Origin: Salpingoeca rosetta
Lineage: Eukaryota; Protista; Choanoflagellata
NCBI GenBank assembly: GCA_033442325.1
Contig: JAWQFM010000008.1
Coordinates: 558,156-622,000, forward strand
DNA length: 63,845 nt
Reading direction: 5' to 3'
This document shows positions 1 to 34,144 of the stretch, in pieces (position 1 is the first letter of the stretch; every line of letters starts with the position of its first letter). A program made the position numbers and the translations under genes. The notes under the pieces are model-generated. The model was given only the letters and a program-made list of their open reading frames with translations. It had not been told where the DNA came from and did not search any database.

Positions 1-2582
1 ACTCCACCACCACCACCACCACCACCACCACCACCACCACCACCACCACCACCAGCAGCAGCAGCACTGCGCATGGTGGCAGACGATGCTGCCTCTCCCA
101 CCCCTTCCATTGCCTTGTCTCCCTCTTCTCCCTCCTTTTCCTCTTCGTCTTCGCCCTCGTCTTCGCCCTCGTGTTCGTCCTCGTGTTCGTCTTGCTCCCT
201 CTCATCGAGGATGCGTCGCTGCCGCTCCAGCTGCGTGTCCACCGAGTCGATGATCGCCTGCACGCGCGTCTTCCCGTCCTTGCGGTACTGCCCGCGGTCT
301 TGTGCCAGCTGCTGAATTTCCTCCTCCAAACACCCGCCCACATCGATGGTCGAGGTGGCCGACGTGGCGGTGGTCTTGCCCCTTCGAGCGACGTTGCCCT
401 TAATGAGCGCCAGCACCACCTCCATTGGGTTGAGGTCGCTGTACGATGGCGGAGAGAAGAGCACCCTGTGGCCCTGGGCTGCGGCCAACTGCACAACCTC
501 CGGCTGCACGTTGTCGTTCACCCACTGCTGCAGACGGAGTCTGAGCTCGCTGGCAAAGTCCGTCTCACTCACAGCGACACCCCTCGCTTGCAGGGCCGCG
601 ATGACGTCTGCCTTGTTCATCTGCTCGGGCACTGGCGTGTCTGCCGGGAGGGTGCGGTGGTAGGCGGCGTTGTCCATGATGATGAGTGATGGCTGATGCA
701 GGTTTGGCAGCAGCGCCTCCTTGAACCAGCCGAGGAAGTTCTGCGCATTGAATGCCTTGTGGTAGTCGCCTGTGTGAAACGCCCCACGCTGCGCCTTGCT
801 CCGCGCACGGCGCTGTTTTGGTTGCTGCTGCTGTTGAGGGAGATCGTCGTCAGCAACAGGGCATGTCCTACGGGTGTGGCCCGGCTGCTTACACCGCCCA
901 CACTTGCGTGACGACTGCTGTGGCATGTTGCCGTGCTGCTGCAATTGCTGCCGCTGCTGCTGCTGCTGCTGCTTCCCATGCCGTTGCTGCCGCTCCCGCT
1001 GCGGTCCGCTGCTTGGGTCGAAGATCCAGGGCGAGTTTGGAACCGGCCCAGCAAGGGCGCGATCGTCGTGGTCGCCGTCAACACAAGTGCGCGGGTCTGG
1101 ACCCTGGACTGCGAGGGCGAAACAGTAGCGGCGACCGCGGTTCGTCTTGCGGTGGCTGCCCTGATCGTTGTTGCTGTTGTTGTTATCAACGTACGATTCA
1201 TCCAAGTACACCTACGGGACAGGGTACGGACTGTGAGCAACGCAGGGCAACGCGCAGCAAACTCGTGACAACAATAACTATGCAACAACAGACACAGCCA
1301 CACCACAGCACAGACAAACACAAACGCACACACACCCACACCCACACATAGACACGCAGACACACACACACACACACACCCACACATAGACACGCAGACA
1401 CACACACACACAGACACGCGCGCGCAGACACAAACACGCAGACACAAACAAACACAAACACACAGACACACACACACACACACACGCAGACACAAACACA
1501 CACAGACACACAGACACGTGCTCATACCTCTCTGAGGCGTTGGGCAGGCGACAGTTGCCTGTTTGCGTCGAGTTCCTTCAGGTACTTCACGAGCAGCCGG
1601 GCGTGCTTGAGCTTTCCTTGCACGACGTGCTTTTTGCGGCGGAGATACCCTGCGCGCTGGAGAAACCGCTGCACCGACCGCAGAGCCGCGGCCTTGTCCT
1701 GTTCGTCATCGTCATCCCCGAGGAAAGAAGGCTGTACGTCCACGTGCCCGTGCTGGCGCAGAAACTTAAACACTTGCACAGCTGTGACACGCTGTCCAGC
1801 CTCCGTCTGCATCTGCACGAAGTCGCGAACTTGACGAAGCACACGCTTGGTCGTGGGAACGCGCGTCGGGAGCTTGGTGTTCTTGCCACGACGATTCTCA
1901 ACAAAGAGACGTTCCAGGCCCTGCAGGCACGATGCAAACAGCATGTGAGCTGGCGTGAACAGACGAGCAGATGAACAGCGCACTGGCGCACGAGCCGGCC
2001 ACAGCAGATTCACCTCCTCAACTTACATCCACGCCGTGCTCTTCAAAAAGCTTGTTGAGCAGTGCGTACTTCCGCCGCACAGTGCTCAGCCCAATCCTGA
2101 GTTGTCCAAGTCAGGGGGTGACAAGAGTCAAGTGAGAACGGTCTTACGAATGACCCAGATCACACATGCCAGCTTAGACAACAATAGCAGAGAGTGTCAA
2201 CATACCCCAGTAGCTCAGCAACACGTTGGTCGACCGGCCCATCTGAGGGCTCGCCGTTGGACTTCCCCCGGTTCATCTCGTGCTTCAATTTCAGCTCAAT
2301 GTACACATGCAAGAGCGTAAGCGTTTCCCTCTCTGTCAGGCCTCGCTGACCCCTCAAGTCTTTGAGGTGCGCACGTACCTTTGCAAGCTTCTGCGTGGTC
2401 GTGTGCTGCTTCGTGCCGGGCTTGGGTTTGGGCTTGGGCGCAGATTTGCGTGTCCTTTGCATTGCCCGCTTGGTTGGCGGCTCCTCGTGCCCTTCCTCAT
2501 CCCCTTCCTCATCACCATCATCGTCGTCCCTCAGCAGCACCATATCCGCCTCATCGGGCACAAACTCCTCGTCGCTGGACAT
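1..2582 (-). CDS. Spliced IS630/Tc1/mariner-superfamily DDE transposase(-derived) gene, DD83E spacing; 3' end beyond window
   Basis: Exons 2582-2206, 2096-2027, 1920-1528 and 1211-<1 have GT..AG introns that join in frame. The protein has an HTH (QRVAELLG|IGLSTVRRKY), a second helical module (ALRSVQRFLQRAGY), then VYLDES, GRRYCF, GDYHKAFNAQNFLGWF, IIMDNAAYH and GHRVLFSPPSYSDLNPME. I count 83 residues between the second D and the E. The last exon frame is absent from the ORF track. Confidence 0.88.
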
Positions 2583-2766
2583 TGTGTTGTGGCGCGAAAG
2601 TCAAACTTTGCGGCAGAACAAAAAGTATCGCTTTGTGTGTCGGGTGGTGGGCACACAATTCTTACGACAACAACAACGCAGACAAGCAAGCAAGCAAGAA
2701 GCAAGCAAGCAAGCAAGCAAGCAAGACAATAGACGACAAGAACAACAGCGATTGTGGTGCGGTGTG

Positions 2767-5700
2767 ATGTCGTCGATGGACTGCGGACCTGATGCGTCCT
2801 CTGCGACGCGCGATGTGCATCCAGGCAACGAGGCAGCGACCCCCGTGCAGGCTGCCGTGGGCGAGGCAGTGGCAGTGGAGGCCGCTGCGGTTGATGGCGC
2901 TGAACAGGCGCAGGAGCAGCAGCCCGAGCAGCAGCAGCAGCAGCAGCAGCCAGCCGGACAGCTGGAGACCATGCACGCCAAAGCAAACACCCTGGACTTA
3001 CACTCCTTCATCGCACAGCTACCAAGGTTCGCTTCTGCGTGTGTGTGCGTGTGTCTGTGTATGTGCGTGTGTCTGTGCATGGATGTGTGTCTGTGTTTGG
3101 GTGTGTTTGTACGTGTGTGAATTTGCGATCCCCCAACTCTCCCCCCCCCTCTCTCTTGAATCGCTGGTGGTCTTGTTCACCTTTGATGACACACGTTTGA
3201 TGTCGTCGTGTGCGCGGGTGTGCGCAGAGACCCAATCCAGGCCCACTTTGAAGTTGCAGAACACGTCGGCAAAGGCTCCCATGGAACCGTGTTTCGCGCC
3301 AAGCATCGTCTGTCGGGTACTCCCGTTGCCATCAAAGTGTGTTTGTGTGTATGTGTGTGTGTATGTGTGTGTATGTGTGTGTATGTGTGTATGTGTGTGT
3401 ATGTGTGTATGTGTGTGCGTATGTGTATGTGTATGTGTGTGTGTGTATGTGTGTGTGTGTATGTGTGTATGTGTGTGCGTATGTGTATGTGTATGTGTAT
3501 GTGTATGCTTGTTTGCAACCCCCCCCCCCGCCAAAACAGGTTCTTGACTCGCACCACATCGCTCGCGTCACCCGTCCACCATTCACCCTTCACCCTCCCT
3601 CACCCTCTCCGGCATCCACTGCCAGGAGGTGACATTGACCCACGGTGCGCGCCCTCGCGAGGTGGAGCACCTGCACCAGGAAATCTACTACCACTCGCTG
3701 TGTAACCACCCGCACATTGTCACGCTGTACACCGTCTACGTCAACGAGTGCCACAGCGGCACCGTGTACTACTTTGTCATGGAGCTGCTGACCGGTGGCG
3801 AGCTGTTCGACCGCTTGCGCAGTGCTCGCCGCTTCACAGAGGCAGACGCAAGCCGCGTTACCCGCAACATCACCACCGCACTCCAGTACATGCACCGGCG
3901 TGGCATTGCACACCGAGATCTCAAACCAGGTTGGGTTACACGTCGTGAACCCGAAGAGTTTGTGTGTGGGGGTGTCTGTATGTGTGTGTGTGTGTGTGCA
4001 TGCGTATGCGTGTACCTGTATATGTGTGTGTATGCGTGTGTATATGTGTGTGAAGTCCTCTTCGTTCCTGTTCTTCCACGTGCGCTCACAGCTGTGGTAC
4101 TGCTGCTGCCGCTATCCCTGTGCTGGTGTTGGTACTTCTTTCAGAGAACATCATGCTGTCACACAAAGGCTGCGATCCGTGGGATCTCAAGATCATCGAC
4201 TTTGGTCAGTGTGCGCGTCGCGTGTGTGTCTGCACACCAGTTGTCTCACTTTTTGTTCTCATTTGCCAACACGCCTGCACACTTGTGCTCACCCACACGT
4301 GTACACATACAATGCTCCGTTGTCTTCAACAGGTTATGCCCGCACGGGCCCAATGACAACCCCACTCGGTTCCGGTTTCTACATTTCCCCTGAGATCATC
4401 CACGCTTACCAATCGTACGTCCATTGCATCTCCTGATTCACATCAACTGTCCAGGGCTTTGTGTTGTAGCCTCCCTCATTTTTCACGCAACACACACTCA
4501 CATGTACACGCGACGCACACACACATGCACACATGTACACACACACGCACATGCACACGCACATGCACACACACGCACACATGTACACGCACGCACACTT
4601 CCATTGCAGGCGAATGGCGTATCGGTTTGTGCCTGGCCGCCCTGCGCCATTCACATATCACACGCAGACGGACATGTGGACGCTTGGCGTCATCGTGTTT
4701 GTACTGCTTACCGGCAGACCCCCGTTCAAGTGAGTTCTTGGCCTGCGCCCGCTGCCCTGCCATTGCTGTTCTCGCTCCTTCTCGCGTTTCTGTTGGCTTT
4801 GCCCTTTCGATCCTCATCGCTCAACCCAACGCGCCTCTCTCCCTCAAACACGATTGCCACAATCAACACACGGCCATCACGGTCACACCGACAACCTCGA
4901 CAATCACCACCACCACCACAATGATCATCACCACCACCACCACCATCACCACCACCACCACCACCACCACCACCACCACAATCATCACCACCACCACCAT
5001 CACCACCGCCGCCGCCGCTTTCCAGGCGCGGACAGCGTCGGTGGTGGGAGGACGCCACGCTGCGCTCCAGCATTCTCGGCACCCGATACCGCTTCAAGCA
5101 AGAGGAAAACGTGTCCCGGGAGGCTCAGGTGTGTGTGTGTGTGGTTGTTTGTGTATGTGTGTTTGTGTGCGCGCATGTGTGGTTATGTTCCTTGTGTGGT
5201 TGTGTGAGTGCATGGTGGCATTTGGGTCACTACTTGGGTGAGCGGTTGTGTCATCAAATGTGCACGCCATCTTGATCTCCGTGGGAGCACGTGCCGTGTT
5301 TGAACAAAGCCGTGCAGTGGTACAACTCATGTTGTGGTTCTTCCTCTGCGCACAGGATCTCGTTGGCTCGCTGCTGCGCGTGGACCCGAAGGAGCGCTTC
5401 ACTGCAGAGGAAGTGTTGCTGCATCCCTGGGTCGTCGGCAGTCCCGAGCTCGCCGCCCGCCACCTCGCCTCCCCCCGAAAGTGCGACCCCTACAACTGCT
5501 GCACGTTAATTTGCCCCTGTGTGTATGTATGTGTGTATGCATGCGTGTATGTATGTGTGTATGTGTGTGTGCGTGTATGCATGCGTGTATGTATGTGTGT
5601 ATGTGTGTGTGCATGTGTGTATGTGCATGTGTGTGTTGCCAGCCAGAGTCTCTGACCCTTATCAATCGTATGTGCGTGTGTGTTGCAGGCTGCGTGAGGA

Positions 5701-31424: not shown

Positions 31425-34144
31425 TTAGACGTGGCTGTCACCTGTAGCAGCTGCTGGGTCGGCATCGCCGCTGCTGTGTTCATGGCCACCGTTGCTGGCA
31501 CTGTTGGAACCGCTTGTGGTCTGGTTCTCCCGAGAATCGCCAGCTGCAGTAGCCATGGGGACGTTACCCGACATGCCTGTGGGATGTGACTGGGGATGCT
31601 GGTGCTGCTGGTGCTGTTGGTTTTGCTGGTGCTGCTGGTGCTGGTGCTGTTGGTGTTGCTGCTGGTGCTGCTGGTGCTGGTGCTGTTGGTGTTGCTGCTG
31701 TTGCTGTTGGTGTTGCTGCTGTTGGTGTTGCTGGTGCTGCTGGTGGATTGTGTGTGGCATCCAGAATGGTCCCTGCGGCAGCTGCAGTGCCTCCACTTCT
31801 GCCCCACCCGACACGCTCGCTGCTGTGGAGGCCGGCACAGGTGTCTCTGCTGACGGTGCTGACGGTGTTGCTTTGGTAGCGGCAGCCAGGGCCGTCGCAG
31901 ACGCTGCTGTTGACGTTGTAGCCTGGGACGTGACGGTACAGGGCACTGTCAGGGCGATGAGTGGCGTGGCTGCTGGCGTGGCTGTTGTTGGGGCCGTTGC
32001 ACTCGAAGATGTTGGGGCTGTTGAGGTGTTGGCGGTTGTTGTGGCGGTTGCACTCGACGTTGTTGGCGCTACTGTCGTGGCTACTGTAGCCGTGGGGCTT
32101 GTCACAGTGCCTGTTGAGCCTGCTGGCGTTGTAGTTGTTGCTGCAGTCGGTGCTGTTGCAGCTGTGATTGTATCTGTTGTTGAGGCGGATGCTGCCACGG
32201 CGGCCCGCGGTGTTGTTGCCGTACCGCCCTGCCCAGGCACGTCCATCAACGTCTACAATCGTGTTGTGTGGGAGGAGACGCAAGAAGCAGGTACGGGTTG
32301 GGGTGAGATGGGGTGGCAGGAAGACAAAATGAGCAACCATAGTTTGCCCGCAGAAGCAGGAGGGTTGTACTCGCCCAGGAGAAACAATAACAGGAACACC
32401 ATACTCATCGAGACACGCACAGACAGAAAGAAAGACACGTCCACACCCACGCGCGCATGAACGGGGGAAGCGATTCACACGCAAGCACGAGCACAAGCAC
32501 GAGCACGAGCACGAGCACAAGCACAAGCACAAGCACGAGTAGGCACGAGCAAGCACAAGCACACGCACGCACACAGACACACACGTACACACACACACAC
32601 GCGCACCTGCTTTGGGCCCCGCAGGTATCCTTCGCGAACAAGAAACCGCTGGGTGGCGCGGAGGGCGGCCTTGTAGTCTTTGGGATCGTCGGCCCCATCG
32701 TCCGTCTTGTCCACCTTCACCAAGTCATGGCGGCGCAGCAGCACGAGCACGTGCGCAGCCGTCACGTTGTTGGTCTCCCTGTGCTGCTGCTGCACATAGT
32801 CGCGGACGAGCTTGCGCACGTCGTCGGTGGCCGGCACGCGCGTCTTGAGCTTTGTCTTCTTGCCTCGCAAGTTGGTTACTTTGAATGGGCCTGCATCCGT
32901 CTTTGCCTGAGCTCCCTGCACACTCACATACCACAGAAGCAACGTGGGATGTGCGTGTGAGTATGTGTGAGTGTGTGTGAGTGTGAGAGTGTGTGAGTGT
33001 GTGTGTGTGTGTGAGTGAGTGAGTGTGTGTGTGTGAGAGTGAAAGAGAGTGGGTGGTGTGTGTGTGTATTTACATGTTCCGATGTTTGTATATGCTTTTG
33101 ATTGTATGTCGGTGTGTGTGCGAGTGTGTGCGAGTGTGTGCTGAAGTGTGTGCTGAAGTGCAAAAGGCAGAGTGTATCTTGGTGATTGACGCTCAACCCC
33201 ACCGTGTCGCCTGGTTTTGCCTGGTCTTGGCCCTTCTGCTCATGCCGGCTGTTCCAGCGAGCGTACGCGTGTCCAACTGTTGCCACACCGTATCTGCGAA
33301 CCACAGGCAAACGCCACCAAAGGTGCAGTCGCATCACATCAGGTATGGCCAAGCAAGTGAGTGTGCATGAGGGTCGTGCGCAAGACAAGTAAACATCGCA
33401 ACGGGAAACAGCAGGCACGCACCAAACACTCGCATACATATGAACACATGTGCACACACACACACACGCACACATATGAATACACACGCACACTCGCAAC
33501 AAACATACACACATACACACATACACCCATCCACACATACACACATACACATGCACATACATGCACACACATGAAACCCACACACGCATATGCGCCCACA
33601 TCACGCACCCGAGGAGGTCTGCAACGCGCTGCTGGATGTTGGCTGCAGATTCCAGCTTGACACCGGCTTGCCGCTGTGCTGCTTGTTCCACTTTCAGCTG
33701 TAAGTACACGTGCACGATGTTCATCAGTTCGCGTTCTGTCAGAGCACTTCGTCCCCGCATATCCTTGAGCTCCTTGAGCTCGCTCTCCAGTTGCTCCACG
33801 TCCCGCGCCACAGACGCAGAGCGGCGCGGCCTCTTCGGCAGGGGCTGGTCGTGACCGCTGCTACCGGTTGCTGCCGTTACCGTTGCTGTCGTGGCAGGTG
33901 CCACTGGTTGTGCTGGCGGTGCAGGTGTTGGCACAGCGGTAGCCGTTGGCGCTGCTGTTCCGCTCGTTGAGGAGGAAGCGGCGCTTGTTGGCGTCGTGCC
34001 TGTTGAAGCGGGTGCCACTGCTGACGCCATGGATGTGCTTGCCATTGGTGTTCCCGTCGCTGGTGCCGCCGTTGCTGGTGTTGGCGTGGCAGTTGCCGGT
34101 GGCAGCACCACCGCTGTCTCCTGCTGCACGACACGATCCCCCAT
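31425..34144 (-). CDS. Transposase-derived HTH protein without DDE domain (paralog of the gene at 1-2582), with Thr/Ala-rich and Gln/His-rich flanks
   Basis: Exons 34144-33609, 33293-33203, 32915-32607 and 32252-31425 join in frame. LKDMRGRSALTERE, QRVADLLG|YGVATV, TRVPATDDVRKLVRDYV and KAALRATQRFLVREGYLR align with the transposase N-terminus. NLS-like PKRPRR. Confidence 0.8.

What the first reader, a model, noticed from the sequence alone, without database searches (positions are those of the whole stretch)
1..2582. Intron-containing transposase with long DD83E catalytic spacing next to a host gene
Seen: an intact spliced frame with HTH and all three candidate catalytic residues (YLDES, MDNAAYH, DLNPME), with 83 residues between D2 and E. 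Known: typical Tc1/IS630 spacing is about 34-35, and long spacing near 82 characterises the Sailor (DD82E) group. Several features look domesticated. It has three introns, one filled with host-style GT repeats, and low-complexity acidic/poly-Gly ends. The usual Trp after the catalytic Glu is replaced (MEVVLA). Its ATG is only 184 bp from the kinase ATG, leaving little room for a transposon end. Inference: a Sailor-like element in a choanoflagellate-type genome, possibly an exapted host gene.
Basis: partly seen in the sequence, partly recalled or inferred. Interest (0 to 1): 0.75.

Follow-up and report, generated by a model that had tools for sequence, protein, structure and literature searches.

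The report
Single-copy Sailor-type transposase gene
This is the annotated Salpingoeca rosetta gene PTSG_03158, a lone, intact, intron-bearing copy of a Sailor-type (Tc1/mariner-like) jumping-gene enzyme that selection has kept intact and that has no detectable transposon ends, so it may have been tamed by the host, though that is not shown.

Summary
Window 2582..1 (minus strand) is S. rosetta PTSG_03158 (661 aa). It has three GT..AG introns, the triad D284/D460/E544 (DD83E), and its start codon lies 184 nt from a kinase gene's start codon.

The Sailor call is supported:
- Every homolog has 81-84 residues between D2 and E.
- One homolog (P0013) is the Phaeodactylum Sailor of Shi et al. 2021.
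- The protein falls inside that clade and apart from IS630 (100/100 support).

Most of the "domestication" cues are inherited family traits. A mobile, TIR-bounded sister family in the same genome (at least 11 copies, 73-76% nt identity) has the same three introns, the GT-repeat intron, acidic ends and the CCHC knuckle.

Some features are specific to this copy:
- It is unique in the genome.
- It has been under purifying selection (ω about 0.15-0.2, and its branch is as short as the mobile family's).
- It has no demonstrable TIRs.
- It has seven private changes at otherwise conserved sites, including Trp→Leu after the catalytic Glu.

The 3' end runs into a 215-N assembly gap, so the far end cannot be read. 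The poly-Gly tail is unverified.

Verdict: a new member of a known kind. Domestication is plausible (about 0.5) but unproven. This scan had already noted related Sailor-derived genes on other DNA of this genome.

The parts
2206..2582 (-). Exon 1 (residues 1 to ~126): acidic and basic low-complexity N-terminus, then the first helices of the DNA-binding region
   Evidence: Identical to P0001. The helix region aligns with distant Sailor homologs.
2097..2205 (-). Intron 1, 109 nt, GTATGT..CAG
   Evidence: Same position in family A, with 74% nt identity and almost no indels.
2027..2096 (-). Exon 2 (IGLSTVRRKYALLNKLFEEHGVD), a helix-turn-helix piece
1921..2026 (-). Intron 2, 106 nt, GTAAGT..CAG
   Evidence: 72% nt identity to family A.
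1528..1920 (-). Exon 3: second part of the DNA-binding region, ending in the linker ...RLRE
   Evidence: ω 0.14-0.16 against family A.
1212..1527 (-). Intron 3, 316 nt, mostly CA/GT microsatellite. The same intron position (after RLRE, before VYLDES) occurs in family A and in the C13 paralog.
102..1211 (-). Exon 4: DDE catalytic domain (D284 at 1200-1202, D460 at 672-674, E544 at 420-422, Leu547 at 411-413) and the acidic tail
   Evidence: pLDDT is above 90 over residues ~430-560.
861..902 (-). CCHC zinc knuckle (CGRCKQPGHTRRTC, residues 384-397), flanked by poly-Gln and inserted between D1 and D2
   Evidence: Also present in family A and in the C13 paralog. Absent from non-S. rosetta homologs.
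1..101 (-). Continuation of the open frame (Ala-rich, then poly-Gly from a (CCA)n repeat) into the assembly gap. The annotation treats it as the start of a fourth, gap-bridging intron. The true C-terminus is unknown.
2583..2766 (.). 184-nt spacer between the divergent start codons. It contains a (GCAA)n microsatellite.
2635..2657 (+). Possible degenerate remnant of the gene-side TIR core (GTGTGTCGGG..GCAC, split by 7 nt). Not above chance once gaps are allowed.
2767..5652 (+). Neighbouring protein-kinase gene, arranged head to head (approximate extent of the kinase-motif exons)

Best explanation
The gene encodes a full-length transposase of the Sailor (DD82E-type, here DD83E) branch of the IS630/Tc1/mariner group. 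Like its relatives, the protein has an N-terminal helical, paired-like DNA-binding region. It also has an RNase-H-like DDE domain, with the Sailor-specific helical insert between the second Asp and the Glu. In addition it carries a poly-Gln/CCHC-knuckle loop that arose in the S. rosetta lineage. This copy is the only one of its sub-lineage in the genome. It sits head to head with a kinase gene and has no recognisable terminal inverted repeats. It has nevertheless been kept open and under purifying selection since it split from the mobile sister family, while acquiring private changes at conserved catalytic-domain positions. My best reading is a stationary transposase gene retained by selection, that is, a candidate domesticated or host-retained Sailor transposase. 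Shown: identity, gene model, copy number, selection, and absence of detectable ends in the assembled DNA. Inferred: immobility, and any host function (DNA binding or regulation, or supplying transposase in trans).
For: Identity and gene model:
- The product equals PTSG_03158.
- D2-E spacing is 83, and 81-84 in all but one of the 14 aligned homologs.
- Homolog P0013 carries the same catalytic-core strings as the 'Ch-Phatri' Sailor sequence in Data S2 of PMC8533490.
- In the tree the protein lies inside the clade that holds that Sailor and bacterial-type Sailor-like proteins, split from IS630 at 100/100.
- The best fold matches are Mos1, Sleeping Beauty and SETMAR catalytic domains.

Copy number:
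- No other genomic DNA is more than 77% identical to this copy outside the microsatellite of intron 3.

Selection:
- ω is 0.13-0.21 with dS about 1 in exons 3-4.
- Amino-acid changes private to the window branch number 35, against 33 for family A with outgroup P0005. No outgroup gives a significant excess.
- The tree end branch is 0.30 against 0.21.

Ends and private changes:
- No inverted match was found between the 184-nt spacer and the 10 kb on the far side, and no match to family A TIRs.
- Seven private changes fall in the 66 columns conserved at 90% or more: R185Q, G244R, D293S (next to an 11-aa deletion after D1), E524A, I543M, W547L and Y562A. Family A has no genuine change there.
- DDE_3 and IS630 profile scores are lower than family A's: 27.9 vs 39.6 bits and 38 vs 58 bits.
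Against: - The catalytic triad and the whole architecture are intact, as in an autonomous element.
- Introns, acidic ends and the knuckle are inherited from mobile ancestors and say nothing about taming.
- The 3' end is cut by a 215-N gap, so one transposon end could be hidden.
- With a single copy, ends can only be found as an inverted match, and a 16/19 TIR like family A's is near the noise level.
- A unique 10-mer of the family A TIR core lies in the spacer in the right orientation.
- S. rosetta is reported to hold other one- or two-copy transposon families (PMC6875170).
- The word search returned no ortholog from another choanoflagellate.
- Expression was not examined.
Confidence: 0.5

Rival explanations
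1. This is an ordinary low-copy autonomous Sailor transposon of its own sub-family. It is still mobile, or was until very recently. Its short ends escape detection because there is only one copy and one end lies in or beyond the assembly gap.
For: - The DDE triad, DNA-binding region and all family motifs are intact.
- The sister family is demonstrably TIR-bounded with only 19-bp imperfect TIRs.
- The amino-acid rate equals that of the mobile family.
- The unique GTGTGTCGGG..GCAC string lies 53-75 nt upstream of the ATG.
- A gap sits at the 3' end.
- Single- or two-copy DNA transposon families are reported in this genome (PMC6875170).
Against: - No inverted match to the spacer was found in the 10 kb of far-side flank, and no second copy, fragment or solo end of this sub-lineage exists anywhere in 55 Mb.
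- There are seven private changes at conserved sites, including the Trp after the catalytic Glu and an 11-aa deletion after D1.
- The candidate TIR core is split by 7 nt and is not above chance when gaps are allowed.
Confidence: 0.35
2. This is a recently immobilised transposon relic that is starting to decay. It is a pseudogene in waiting, with no host function.
For: No TIRs were found. Private changes at conserved sites and lower profile scores than family A.
Against: The 661-codon frame and all six splice sites are intact. By my estimate (inference), if the seven changes in 66 conserved columns had arisen neutrally, that implies about 5% neutral divergence. That would be about 90 substitutions, with 3-4 expected stop codons plus frameshifts, yet none is seen. 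The branch is not significantly longer than family A's.
Confidence: 0.1
3. It is not a Sailor but a member of another IS630/Tc1/mariner lineage whose long spacer arose independently.
For: My tree has no Tc1, mariner, pogo or Gambol reference sequences. Pfam and NCBIfam see only generic DDE_3/IS630 similarity.
Against: There is motif-by-motif agreement with the published Sailor alignment (GRRYCFAxAIQGPDP, GDYHKxFN, LLPNLHQPxLIxMDNAAYH, GHxVLFxPPYxSDLxPxE), and identity of homolog P0013 to its Phaeodactylum entry. The 81-84 spacer is the same across the clade.
Confidence: 0.03

Closest known systems
Sailor (DD82E) superfamily of IS630-Tc1-mariner transposons (Shi et al. 2021, PMC8533490)
   Same: DDE triad with an 83-residue D2-E spacer (the paper gives a range of 78-111 and says DD83E is frequent). 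It shares the same conserved blocks as the paper's alignment, and its homolog P0013 equals the paper's Phaeodactylum entry. N-terminal DNA-binding region and acidic tail. The paper already lists one poorly resolved S. rosetta element ('DD?E', 381 aa).
   Different: Three spliceosomal introns. A poly-Gln plus CCHC-knuckle insert makes the D1-D2 spacer 175 residues, against 90-134 in the other aligned homologs. No TIRs and no TATA duplication were found. Trp after the catalytic Glu is replaced by Leu. There is an 11-aa deletion after D1.
'Family A' Sailor elements of S. rosetta (PTSG_04010, PTSG_11539, PTSG_00970 and others)
   Same: Sister in the tree (98/93). 63-70% amino-acid and 73-76% nucleotide identity. 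Same three intron positions, GT-repeat intron 3, CCHC knuckle, acidic tail and DD83E spacing.
   Different: Family A has at least 11 copies at 88-99% identity, with 19-bp imperfect TIRs starting GT and copies spanning 3.6 to more than 10 kb. The window gene is unique and has no TIRs. It keeps the ancestral N-terminal helix that is frameshifted or stopped in family A copies, and it carries seven private changes at conserved sites.
SrosTm, the Tc1/mariner element of S. rosetta (Southworth et al. 2019, PMC6875170)
   Same: Same genome. The intronless multi-copy ORFs I take to be SrosTm (L012, L015-17) are also Sailor-type, at 36-38% identity across the D2-E region.
   Different: The paper describes SrosTm as intronless, 2.07 kb, with 28-bp ITRs. 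These ORFs have no knuckle. I did not verify that these loci are SrosTm.
Domesticated Tc1/mariner-pogo transposases such as SETMAR/Metnase (from my own knowledge)
   Same: Single-copy, immobile transposase-derived gene kept by selection. SETMAR catalytic-domain structures are among the fold matches.
   Different: SETMAR has a changed triad (DDN), a fused SET domain and documented orthologs across primates. Here the triad is intact, there is no fusion, and orthologs and expression are unknown.

Membership tests
Sailor (DD82E) superfamily | DDE triad with about 82 residues (78-111) between the second Asp and the Glu | tested here: met
   D460 to E544 gives 83 residues. The spacer is 81-84 in 13 of the 14 other aligned sequences.
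Sailor (DD82E) superfamily | Phylogenetic placement in the Sailor clade, apart from IS630, Tc1/mariner, pogo and Gambol | tested here: inconclusive
   The protein is nested among eukaryotic homologs that include the published Phaeodactylum Sailor. Bacterial-type Sailor-like proteins lie outside them, and IS630 is split off at 100/100. No Tc1, mariner, pogo or Gambol references could be brought in by reference, so separation from those groups was not tested.
Sailor (DD82E) superfamily | Conserved sequence blocks of the Sailor catalytic core | tested here: met
   YLDESY, GRRYCF..A.QGPDP, GDYHK.FN, LLPNLHQPSLI.MDNAAYH and GH.VLF.PP..SDL.P.E are shared with Data S2 of PMC8533490. The terminal Trp of the block is Leu here.
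Sailor (DD82E) superfamily | Terminal inverted repeats (18 bp upward, usually starting GT or CC) | tested here: not met
   No inverted match was found between the spacer 2583-2766 and the 10 kb beyond the gene, and there is no family A TIR. One end may lie in the 215-N gap. The sister family does have GT-starting 19-bp TIRs.
Sailor (DD82E) superfamily | TATA (or TA-type) target-site duplication | tested here: inconclusive
   Without ends, no duplication can be defined. Family A copies show TGA/TCA next to the TIR core.
Domesticated (exapted) transposase gene | Single copy and immobile (ends lost) | tested here: inconclusive
   The copy is unique and no TIRs were found, but the 3' side is not assembled.
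Domesticated (exapted) transposase gene | Purifying selection on the stationary copy itself | tested here: met
   Pairwise ω is 0.13-0.21 in exons 3-4, and private amino-acid changes are equal on both branches. The ORF and splice sites are intact. No branch-specific codon model was run.
Domesticated (exapted) transposase gene | Orthologs at the same locus in other species or isolates | not testable with these tools
   No other choanoflagellate genome is on hand.
Domesticated (exapted) transposase gene | Expression as a host transcript | not tested
   Only the public gene model is known. No paper mentions PTSG_03158.

The most novel reading that the evidence does not exclude
PTSG_03158 may be a host-fixed, catalytically competent Sailor transposase lacking ends of its own. 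It would belong to a set of at least four Sailor-derived stationary genes in S. rosetta, alongside the copies with D1 changed to Gly and with the Glu lost (the latter noted by another agent, not checked here), and the DDE-less paralog 30 kb away in this window. It would act either as the trans source that mobilises the largely damaged family A elements, or as a recruited DNA-binding protein or nuclease. The unusually conserved introns 1-2 would serve its regulation, for example through intron-retention isoforms that stop immediately.
Probability: 0.2. Interest if true: 0.65.

Novelty: new member of a known kind. Interest (0 to 1): 0.4.

Why it matters
Choanoflagellates are the closest living relatives of animals, and S. 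rosetta is a genetically tractable model. A transposase gene being retained by the host, with its mobile sister family still in the same genome, would be a useful case for studying how transposases are recruited. If instead it is an ordinary low-copy Sailor element, it still adds to what is known. It gives a resolved DD83E gene model, with introns and a zinc-knuckle insert, for a genome where the Sailor survey listed only an unresolved 'DD?E' entry. I also could not find this family in the S. rosetta transposon survey.

Tried and rejected
- **Family A terminus upstream of the ATG.** I aligned the 5' spacer to family A's 5' end. Identity was only 54% and no conserved terminus appeared.
- **Left-end TIR by eye.** I saw a possible TIR near L031 9609-9627, followed by (CAA)n as in family A. 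A gapped scan scored it 18, below random places in the same flank (20-21), so I dropped it.
- **Right-end candidate 2635-2657.** The 10-mer is unique in the window but not above GT-repeat noise once gaps are allowed. I keep it only as a lead.
- **Family A 'cargo' DNA beside the window gene.** None was found by blastn or tblastx.
- **Codon-usage shift as a sign of host adaptation.** GC3 is the same in the window gene and family A.
- **'Giant open frames' next to family A copies.** These are runs of N, not genes.
- **PDB sequence search.** No hit.
- **tblastn of P0001 on family A loci to score copy integrity.** The result is uninterpretable because the matches read through introns.
- **Big representative search (search of protein representatives).** Not used, because the word search and family scans had already settled the family.
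- **Joined spliced sequence.** I built none. Exons were searched separately by reference, and the full-length protein used is the database's own record P0001.

Full report
**What is there.**
Translating the minus strand of window 1-2582 gives four in-frame pieces. Their junctions are E1 2582-2206, E2 2096-2027, E3 1920-1528 and E4 1211-102. The introns are 109, 106 and 316 nt, all GT..AG.

A word search with exon 4 returned P0001, 'hypothetical protein PTSG_03158 [Salpingoeca rosetta]', 661 aa. Its sequence uses exactly these junctions. The window is G000:C8:558156-622000 of a 55.4-Mb genome.

Exons were searched one by one by reference, and P0001 is the database's own record.

The catalytic residues are D284 (YLDES), D460 (MDNAAYH) and E544 (DLNPME). 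That gives 83 residues between D2 and E and 175 between D1 and D2.

The start codon is 184 nt from the start codon of a divergent gene that carries the GxGxxG/VAIK, HRDLKP and DFG kinase motifs.

**The 3' end is not assembled.**
The window begins directly after 215 N (L031 9786-10000). A (CAA)n repeat lies left of the gap and a (CCA)n repeat right of it. The exon-4 frame stays open through 17 Gly codons into the gap.

The public model instead splices at 102/101 to an 11-codon exon at L031 9578-9613. I read that as a gap-bridging device.

**Family.**
- Pfam gives only a borderline DDE_3 match: 29.1 bits for exon 4 and 27.9 for the whole protein, against a cut-off of 28.6. NCBIfam IS630 gives 38 bits against a cut-off of 100.
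- The word search found 23 non-S. rosetta homologs at up to 54% local identity. In an alignment of 15 sequences the whole architecture is shared: acidic N-terminus, helical DNA-binding region, RLREVYLDESY, GRRYCFxAAIQGPDP, GDYHKxFN, LLPNLHQPSLIIMDNAAYH, GHxVLFTPPYHSDLQPIELVW and an acidic tail. D2-E is 81-84 in 13 of the other 14.
- The paper that defined Sailor (PMC8533490) describes a DD82E signature with a range of 78-111, says DD83E is frequent, and lists one choanoflagellate, S. rosetta, as an unresolved 'DD?E' entry.
- Its alignment file contains the same blocks. Its Phaeodactylum entry reads the same as my homolog P0013 through the catalytic core.
- In a maximum-likelihood tree of 25 sequences, the window protein is sister to family A (98/93). 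It lies inside the eukaryotic clade that holds P0013. Two bacterial-type Sailor-like proteins lie outside that clade, and three annotated IS630 transposases from plasmids are split off at 100/100. I could not bring in Tc1, mariner, pogo or Gambol references, so separation from those groups rests on the published alignment and not on my tree.
- An AlphaFold model has mean pLDDT 69 and above 90 over the catalytic core. Its best PDB matches are Mos1, the Sleeping Beauty catalytic domain (probability 0.99) and SETMAR, though E-values are weak.

**Relatives in the same genome.**
The window copy is unique. Nothing else in the genome is more than 77% identical to it at DNA level, apart from the microsatellite of intron 3.

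Its nearest relatives form what I call 'family A'. These copies are 88-99% identical to each other and 73-76% identical to the window gene. Some are annotated as PTSG_04010, PTSG_11539 and PTSG_00970.

Family A is a real transposon:
- Eleven gene-side termini and nine far-side termini exist.
- They form imperfect 19-bp inverted repeats, GTGA[C/T]AGTGCCCGACACAC and GTCAGAGTGCACGACACAC, with unrelated flanks.
- Paired ends lie 3.6 kb to more than 10 kb apart. The long copies carry more than 3 kb of shared non-transposase DNA and many assembly gaps.
- The TIR strings do not occur in the held supplements of the S. rosetta transposon survey.

Further Sailor-like lineages in this genome are listed under things noticed in passing.

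**Which 'domestication' cues are inherited.**
- Family A has the same three intron positions, including GT repeats in intron 3.
- The C13 paralog also has an intron after RLRE.
- The CCHC knuckle with poly-Gln occurs in family A and in C13.
- Acidic termini occur in distant homologs.
- A 19-bp TIR would fit in the 184-nt spacer.

None of these features separates this copy from mobile relatives.

**What is special to this copy.**
1. *Selection.* Against family A, exons 3 and 4 give ω 0.13-0.21 with dS about 1. Third-position identity is 0.52-0.62, against 0.80-0.89 at first and second positions. Exon 1 gives ω about 0.8. There, however, family A is the degraded partner: it is frameshifted or carries a TGA. 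The window keeps a helix that aligns with distant homologs.
2. *Rate.* With 13 different outgroups, the changes private to the window branch and to family A are about equal. For example 35 vs 33 and 36 vs 28, and none is significant. Tree end branches are 0.30 and 0.21. Had the window copy drifted neutrally for a large part of a dS-about-1 divergence, its branch would be several times longer and its frame broken (inference).
3. *Private changes.* In the 66 columns conserved at 90% or more among non-S. rosetta homologs, the window protein has seven private changes: R185Q, G244R, D293S beside an 11-aa deletion after D1, E524A, I543M, W547L and Y562A. The two family A 'deviations' lie where the annotated model P0003 skips a conserved segment that P0002 retains. 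Seven against none gives a sign-test p of about 0.016. If the two are counted as real, the difference is not significant.
4. *Ends.* There is no inverted match between the spacer and the 10 kb beyond the gene, except at microsatellites. There is no match to the family A TIRs within 5 mismatches, and no family A cargo DNA. One lead remains. The 10-mer GTGTGTCGGG of the TIR core occurs once in the whole window, in the spacer and in the right orientation, followed after 7 nt by GCAC. A gapped scan does not lift it above GT-repeat noise.

**Interpretation.**
- Certain (about 0.9): this is a Sailor-type transposase gene, correctly spliced in the public model at three junctions, unique in the genome, and under purifying selection for most of its history.
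- Open: whether it is stationary and host-retained (0.5), a low-copy mobile element whose ends are hidden (0.35), or a fresh relic (0.1).
- I favour retention. The private changes at conserved sites, together with an unbroken 661-codon frame, are hard to get by neutral decay. About 5% neutral divergence would bring 3-4 stop codons plus frameshifts (inference). No trace of a second copy of this sub-lineage exists.
- I do not regard domestication as shown.

**Unexplained.**
Introns 1 and 2 differ from family A at only 25-28% of sites and have almost no indels. Four-fold sites of exons 3-4 differ at about 45%. Possible explanations are gene conversion of the 5' third of the gene, or functional elements within the introns. 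I could not decide between them.

**Relation to earlier notes of this scan.**
Other agents had already described Sailor-type genes on other DNA of this genome, and a DDE-less paralog at 31425-34144 of this window. I checked the following myself:
- the species name;
- the knuckle in this gene;
- the D-to-G paralog;
- in part, the T-N-A idea on family A ends.

**Limits.**
- The large representative search was not used.
- No RNA data and no second choanoflagellate genome were available.

Noticed in passing
L040 3828-7429 (G000:C11:960828-964429); L044 2114 with L032 5694 (C7:570114-580694); C5:542054-553032; C16:526149-544672: Family A is a TIR-bounded Sailor-type element with imperfect 19-bp TIRs (GTGAYAGTGCCCGACACAC / GTCAGAGTGCACGACACAC). 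Paired ends lie 3.6 to more than 10 kb apart. The long copies share more than 3 kb of non-transposase DNA. The TIR strings are absent from the held supplements of the S. rosetta TE survey.
   Followed up: partly
Family A termini in L032, L033, L040, L043, L044-L046: The three bases just outside the TIR core read TGA or TCA in every copy. This fits either a T-N-A target duplication or a fixed part of the TIR. No TA or TATA duplication is visible.
   Followed up: partly
window 2205-2097 and 2026-1921: Introns 1 and 2 are more conserved between the window gene and family A (72-74% identity, almost no indels) than synonymous sites of exons 3-4 (about 55% identity). Retaining either intron would terminate the protein immediately.
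   Followed up: partly
L007 (G000:C13:398726-402505): A further intron-bearing Sailor-like paralog, with its own CCHC knuckle and long poly-Gln tracts at the same place in the catalytic domain, and an intron after RLRE as in the window gene.
   Followed up: no
L008 (G000:C5:557705-561472): A Sailor-like paralog in which the first catalytic Asp is Gly (VYIGESY), inside a very long open frame with a His/Gln/Pro-rich N-terminus.
   Followed up: no
L021 (G000:C32:~670k, also C8:~1414k) and L026 (C25:~445k, also ~223k): Two more low-copy Sailor-like lineages. The first has an acidic, Ser-rich expansion between D2 and E. The second reads MDHAAH at the D2 motif.
   Followed up: no
L012, L015-L017, L025: Intronless multi-copy ORFs without a knuckle (probably SrosTm of Southworth et al. 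2019) also carry the Sailor blocks and the long D2-E spacer. The element published as Tc1/mariner therefore looks like a Sailor.
   Followed up: partly
window 32604-33844 (G000:C8:590759-591999): A weaker relative of exons 1 and 3 (38-52% identity) lies about 30 kb away in the same window. This is the DDE-less paralog noted by another agent.
   Followed up: no
L031 9640-10000 and window 1-60: A 215-N gap lies between a (CAA)n and a (CCA)n repeat. Many family A copies likewise abut long N runs, and those runs produced the spurious 'open frames' of 2000-5000 aa in the six-frame search.
   Followed up: yes
window 2767-5652: The neighbouring kinase gene has GT/CA microsatellites in most of its introns. 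The repeat-filled intron 3 of the transposase gene is therefore typical of this genome.
   Followed up: partly
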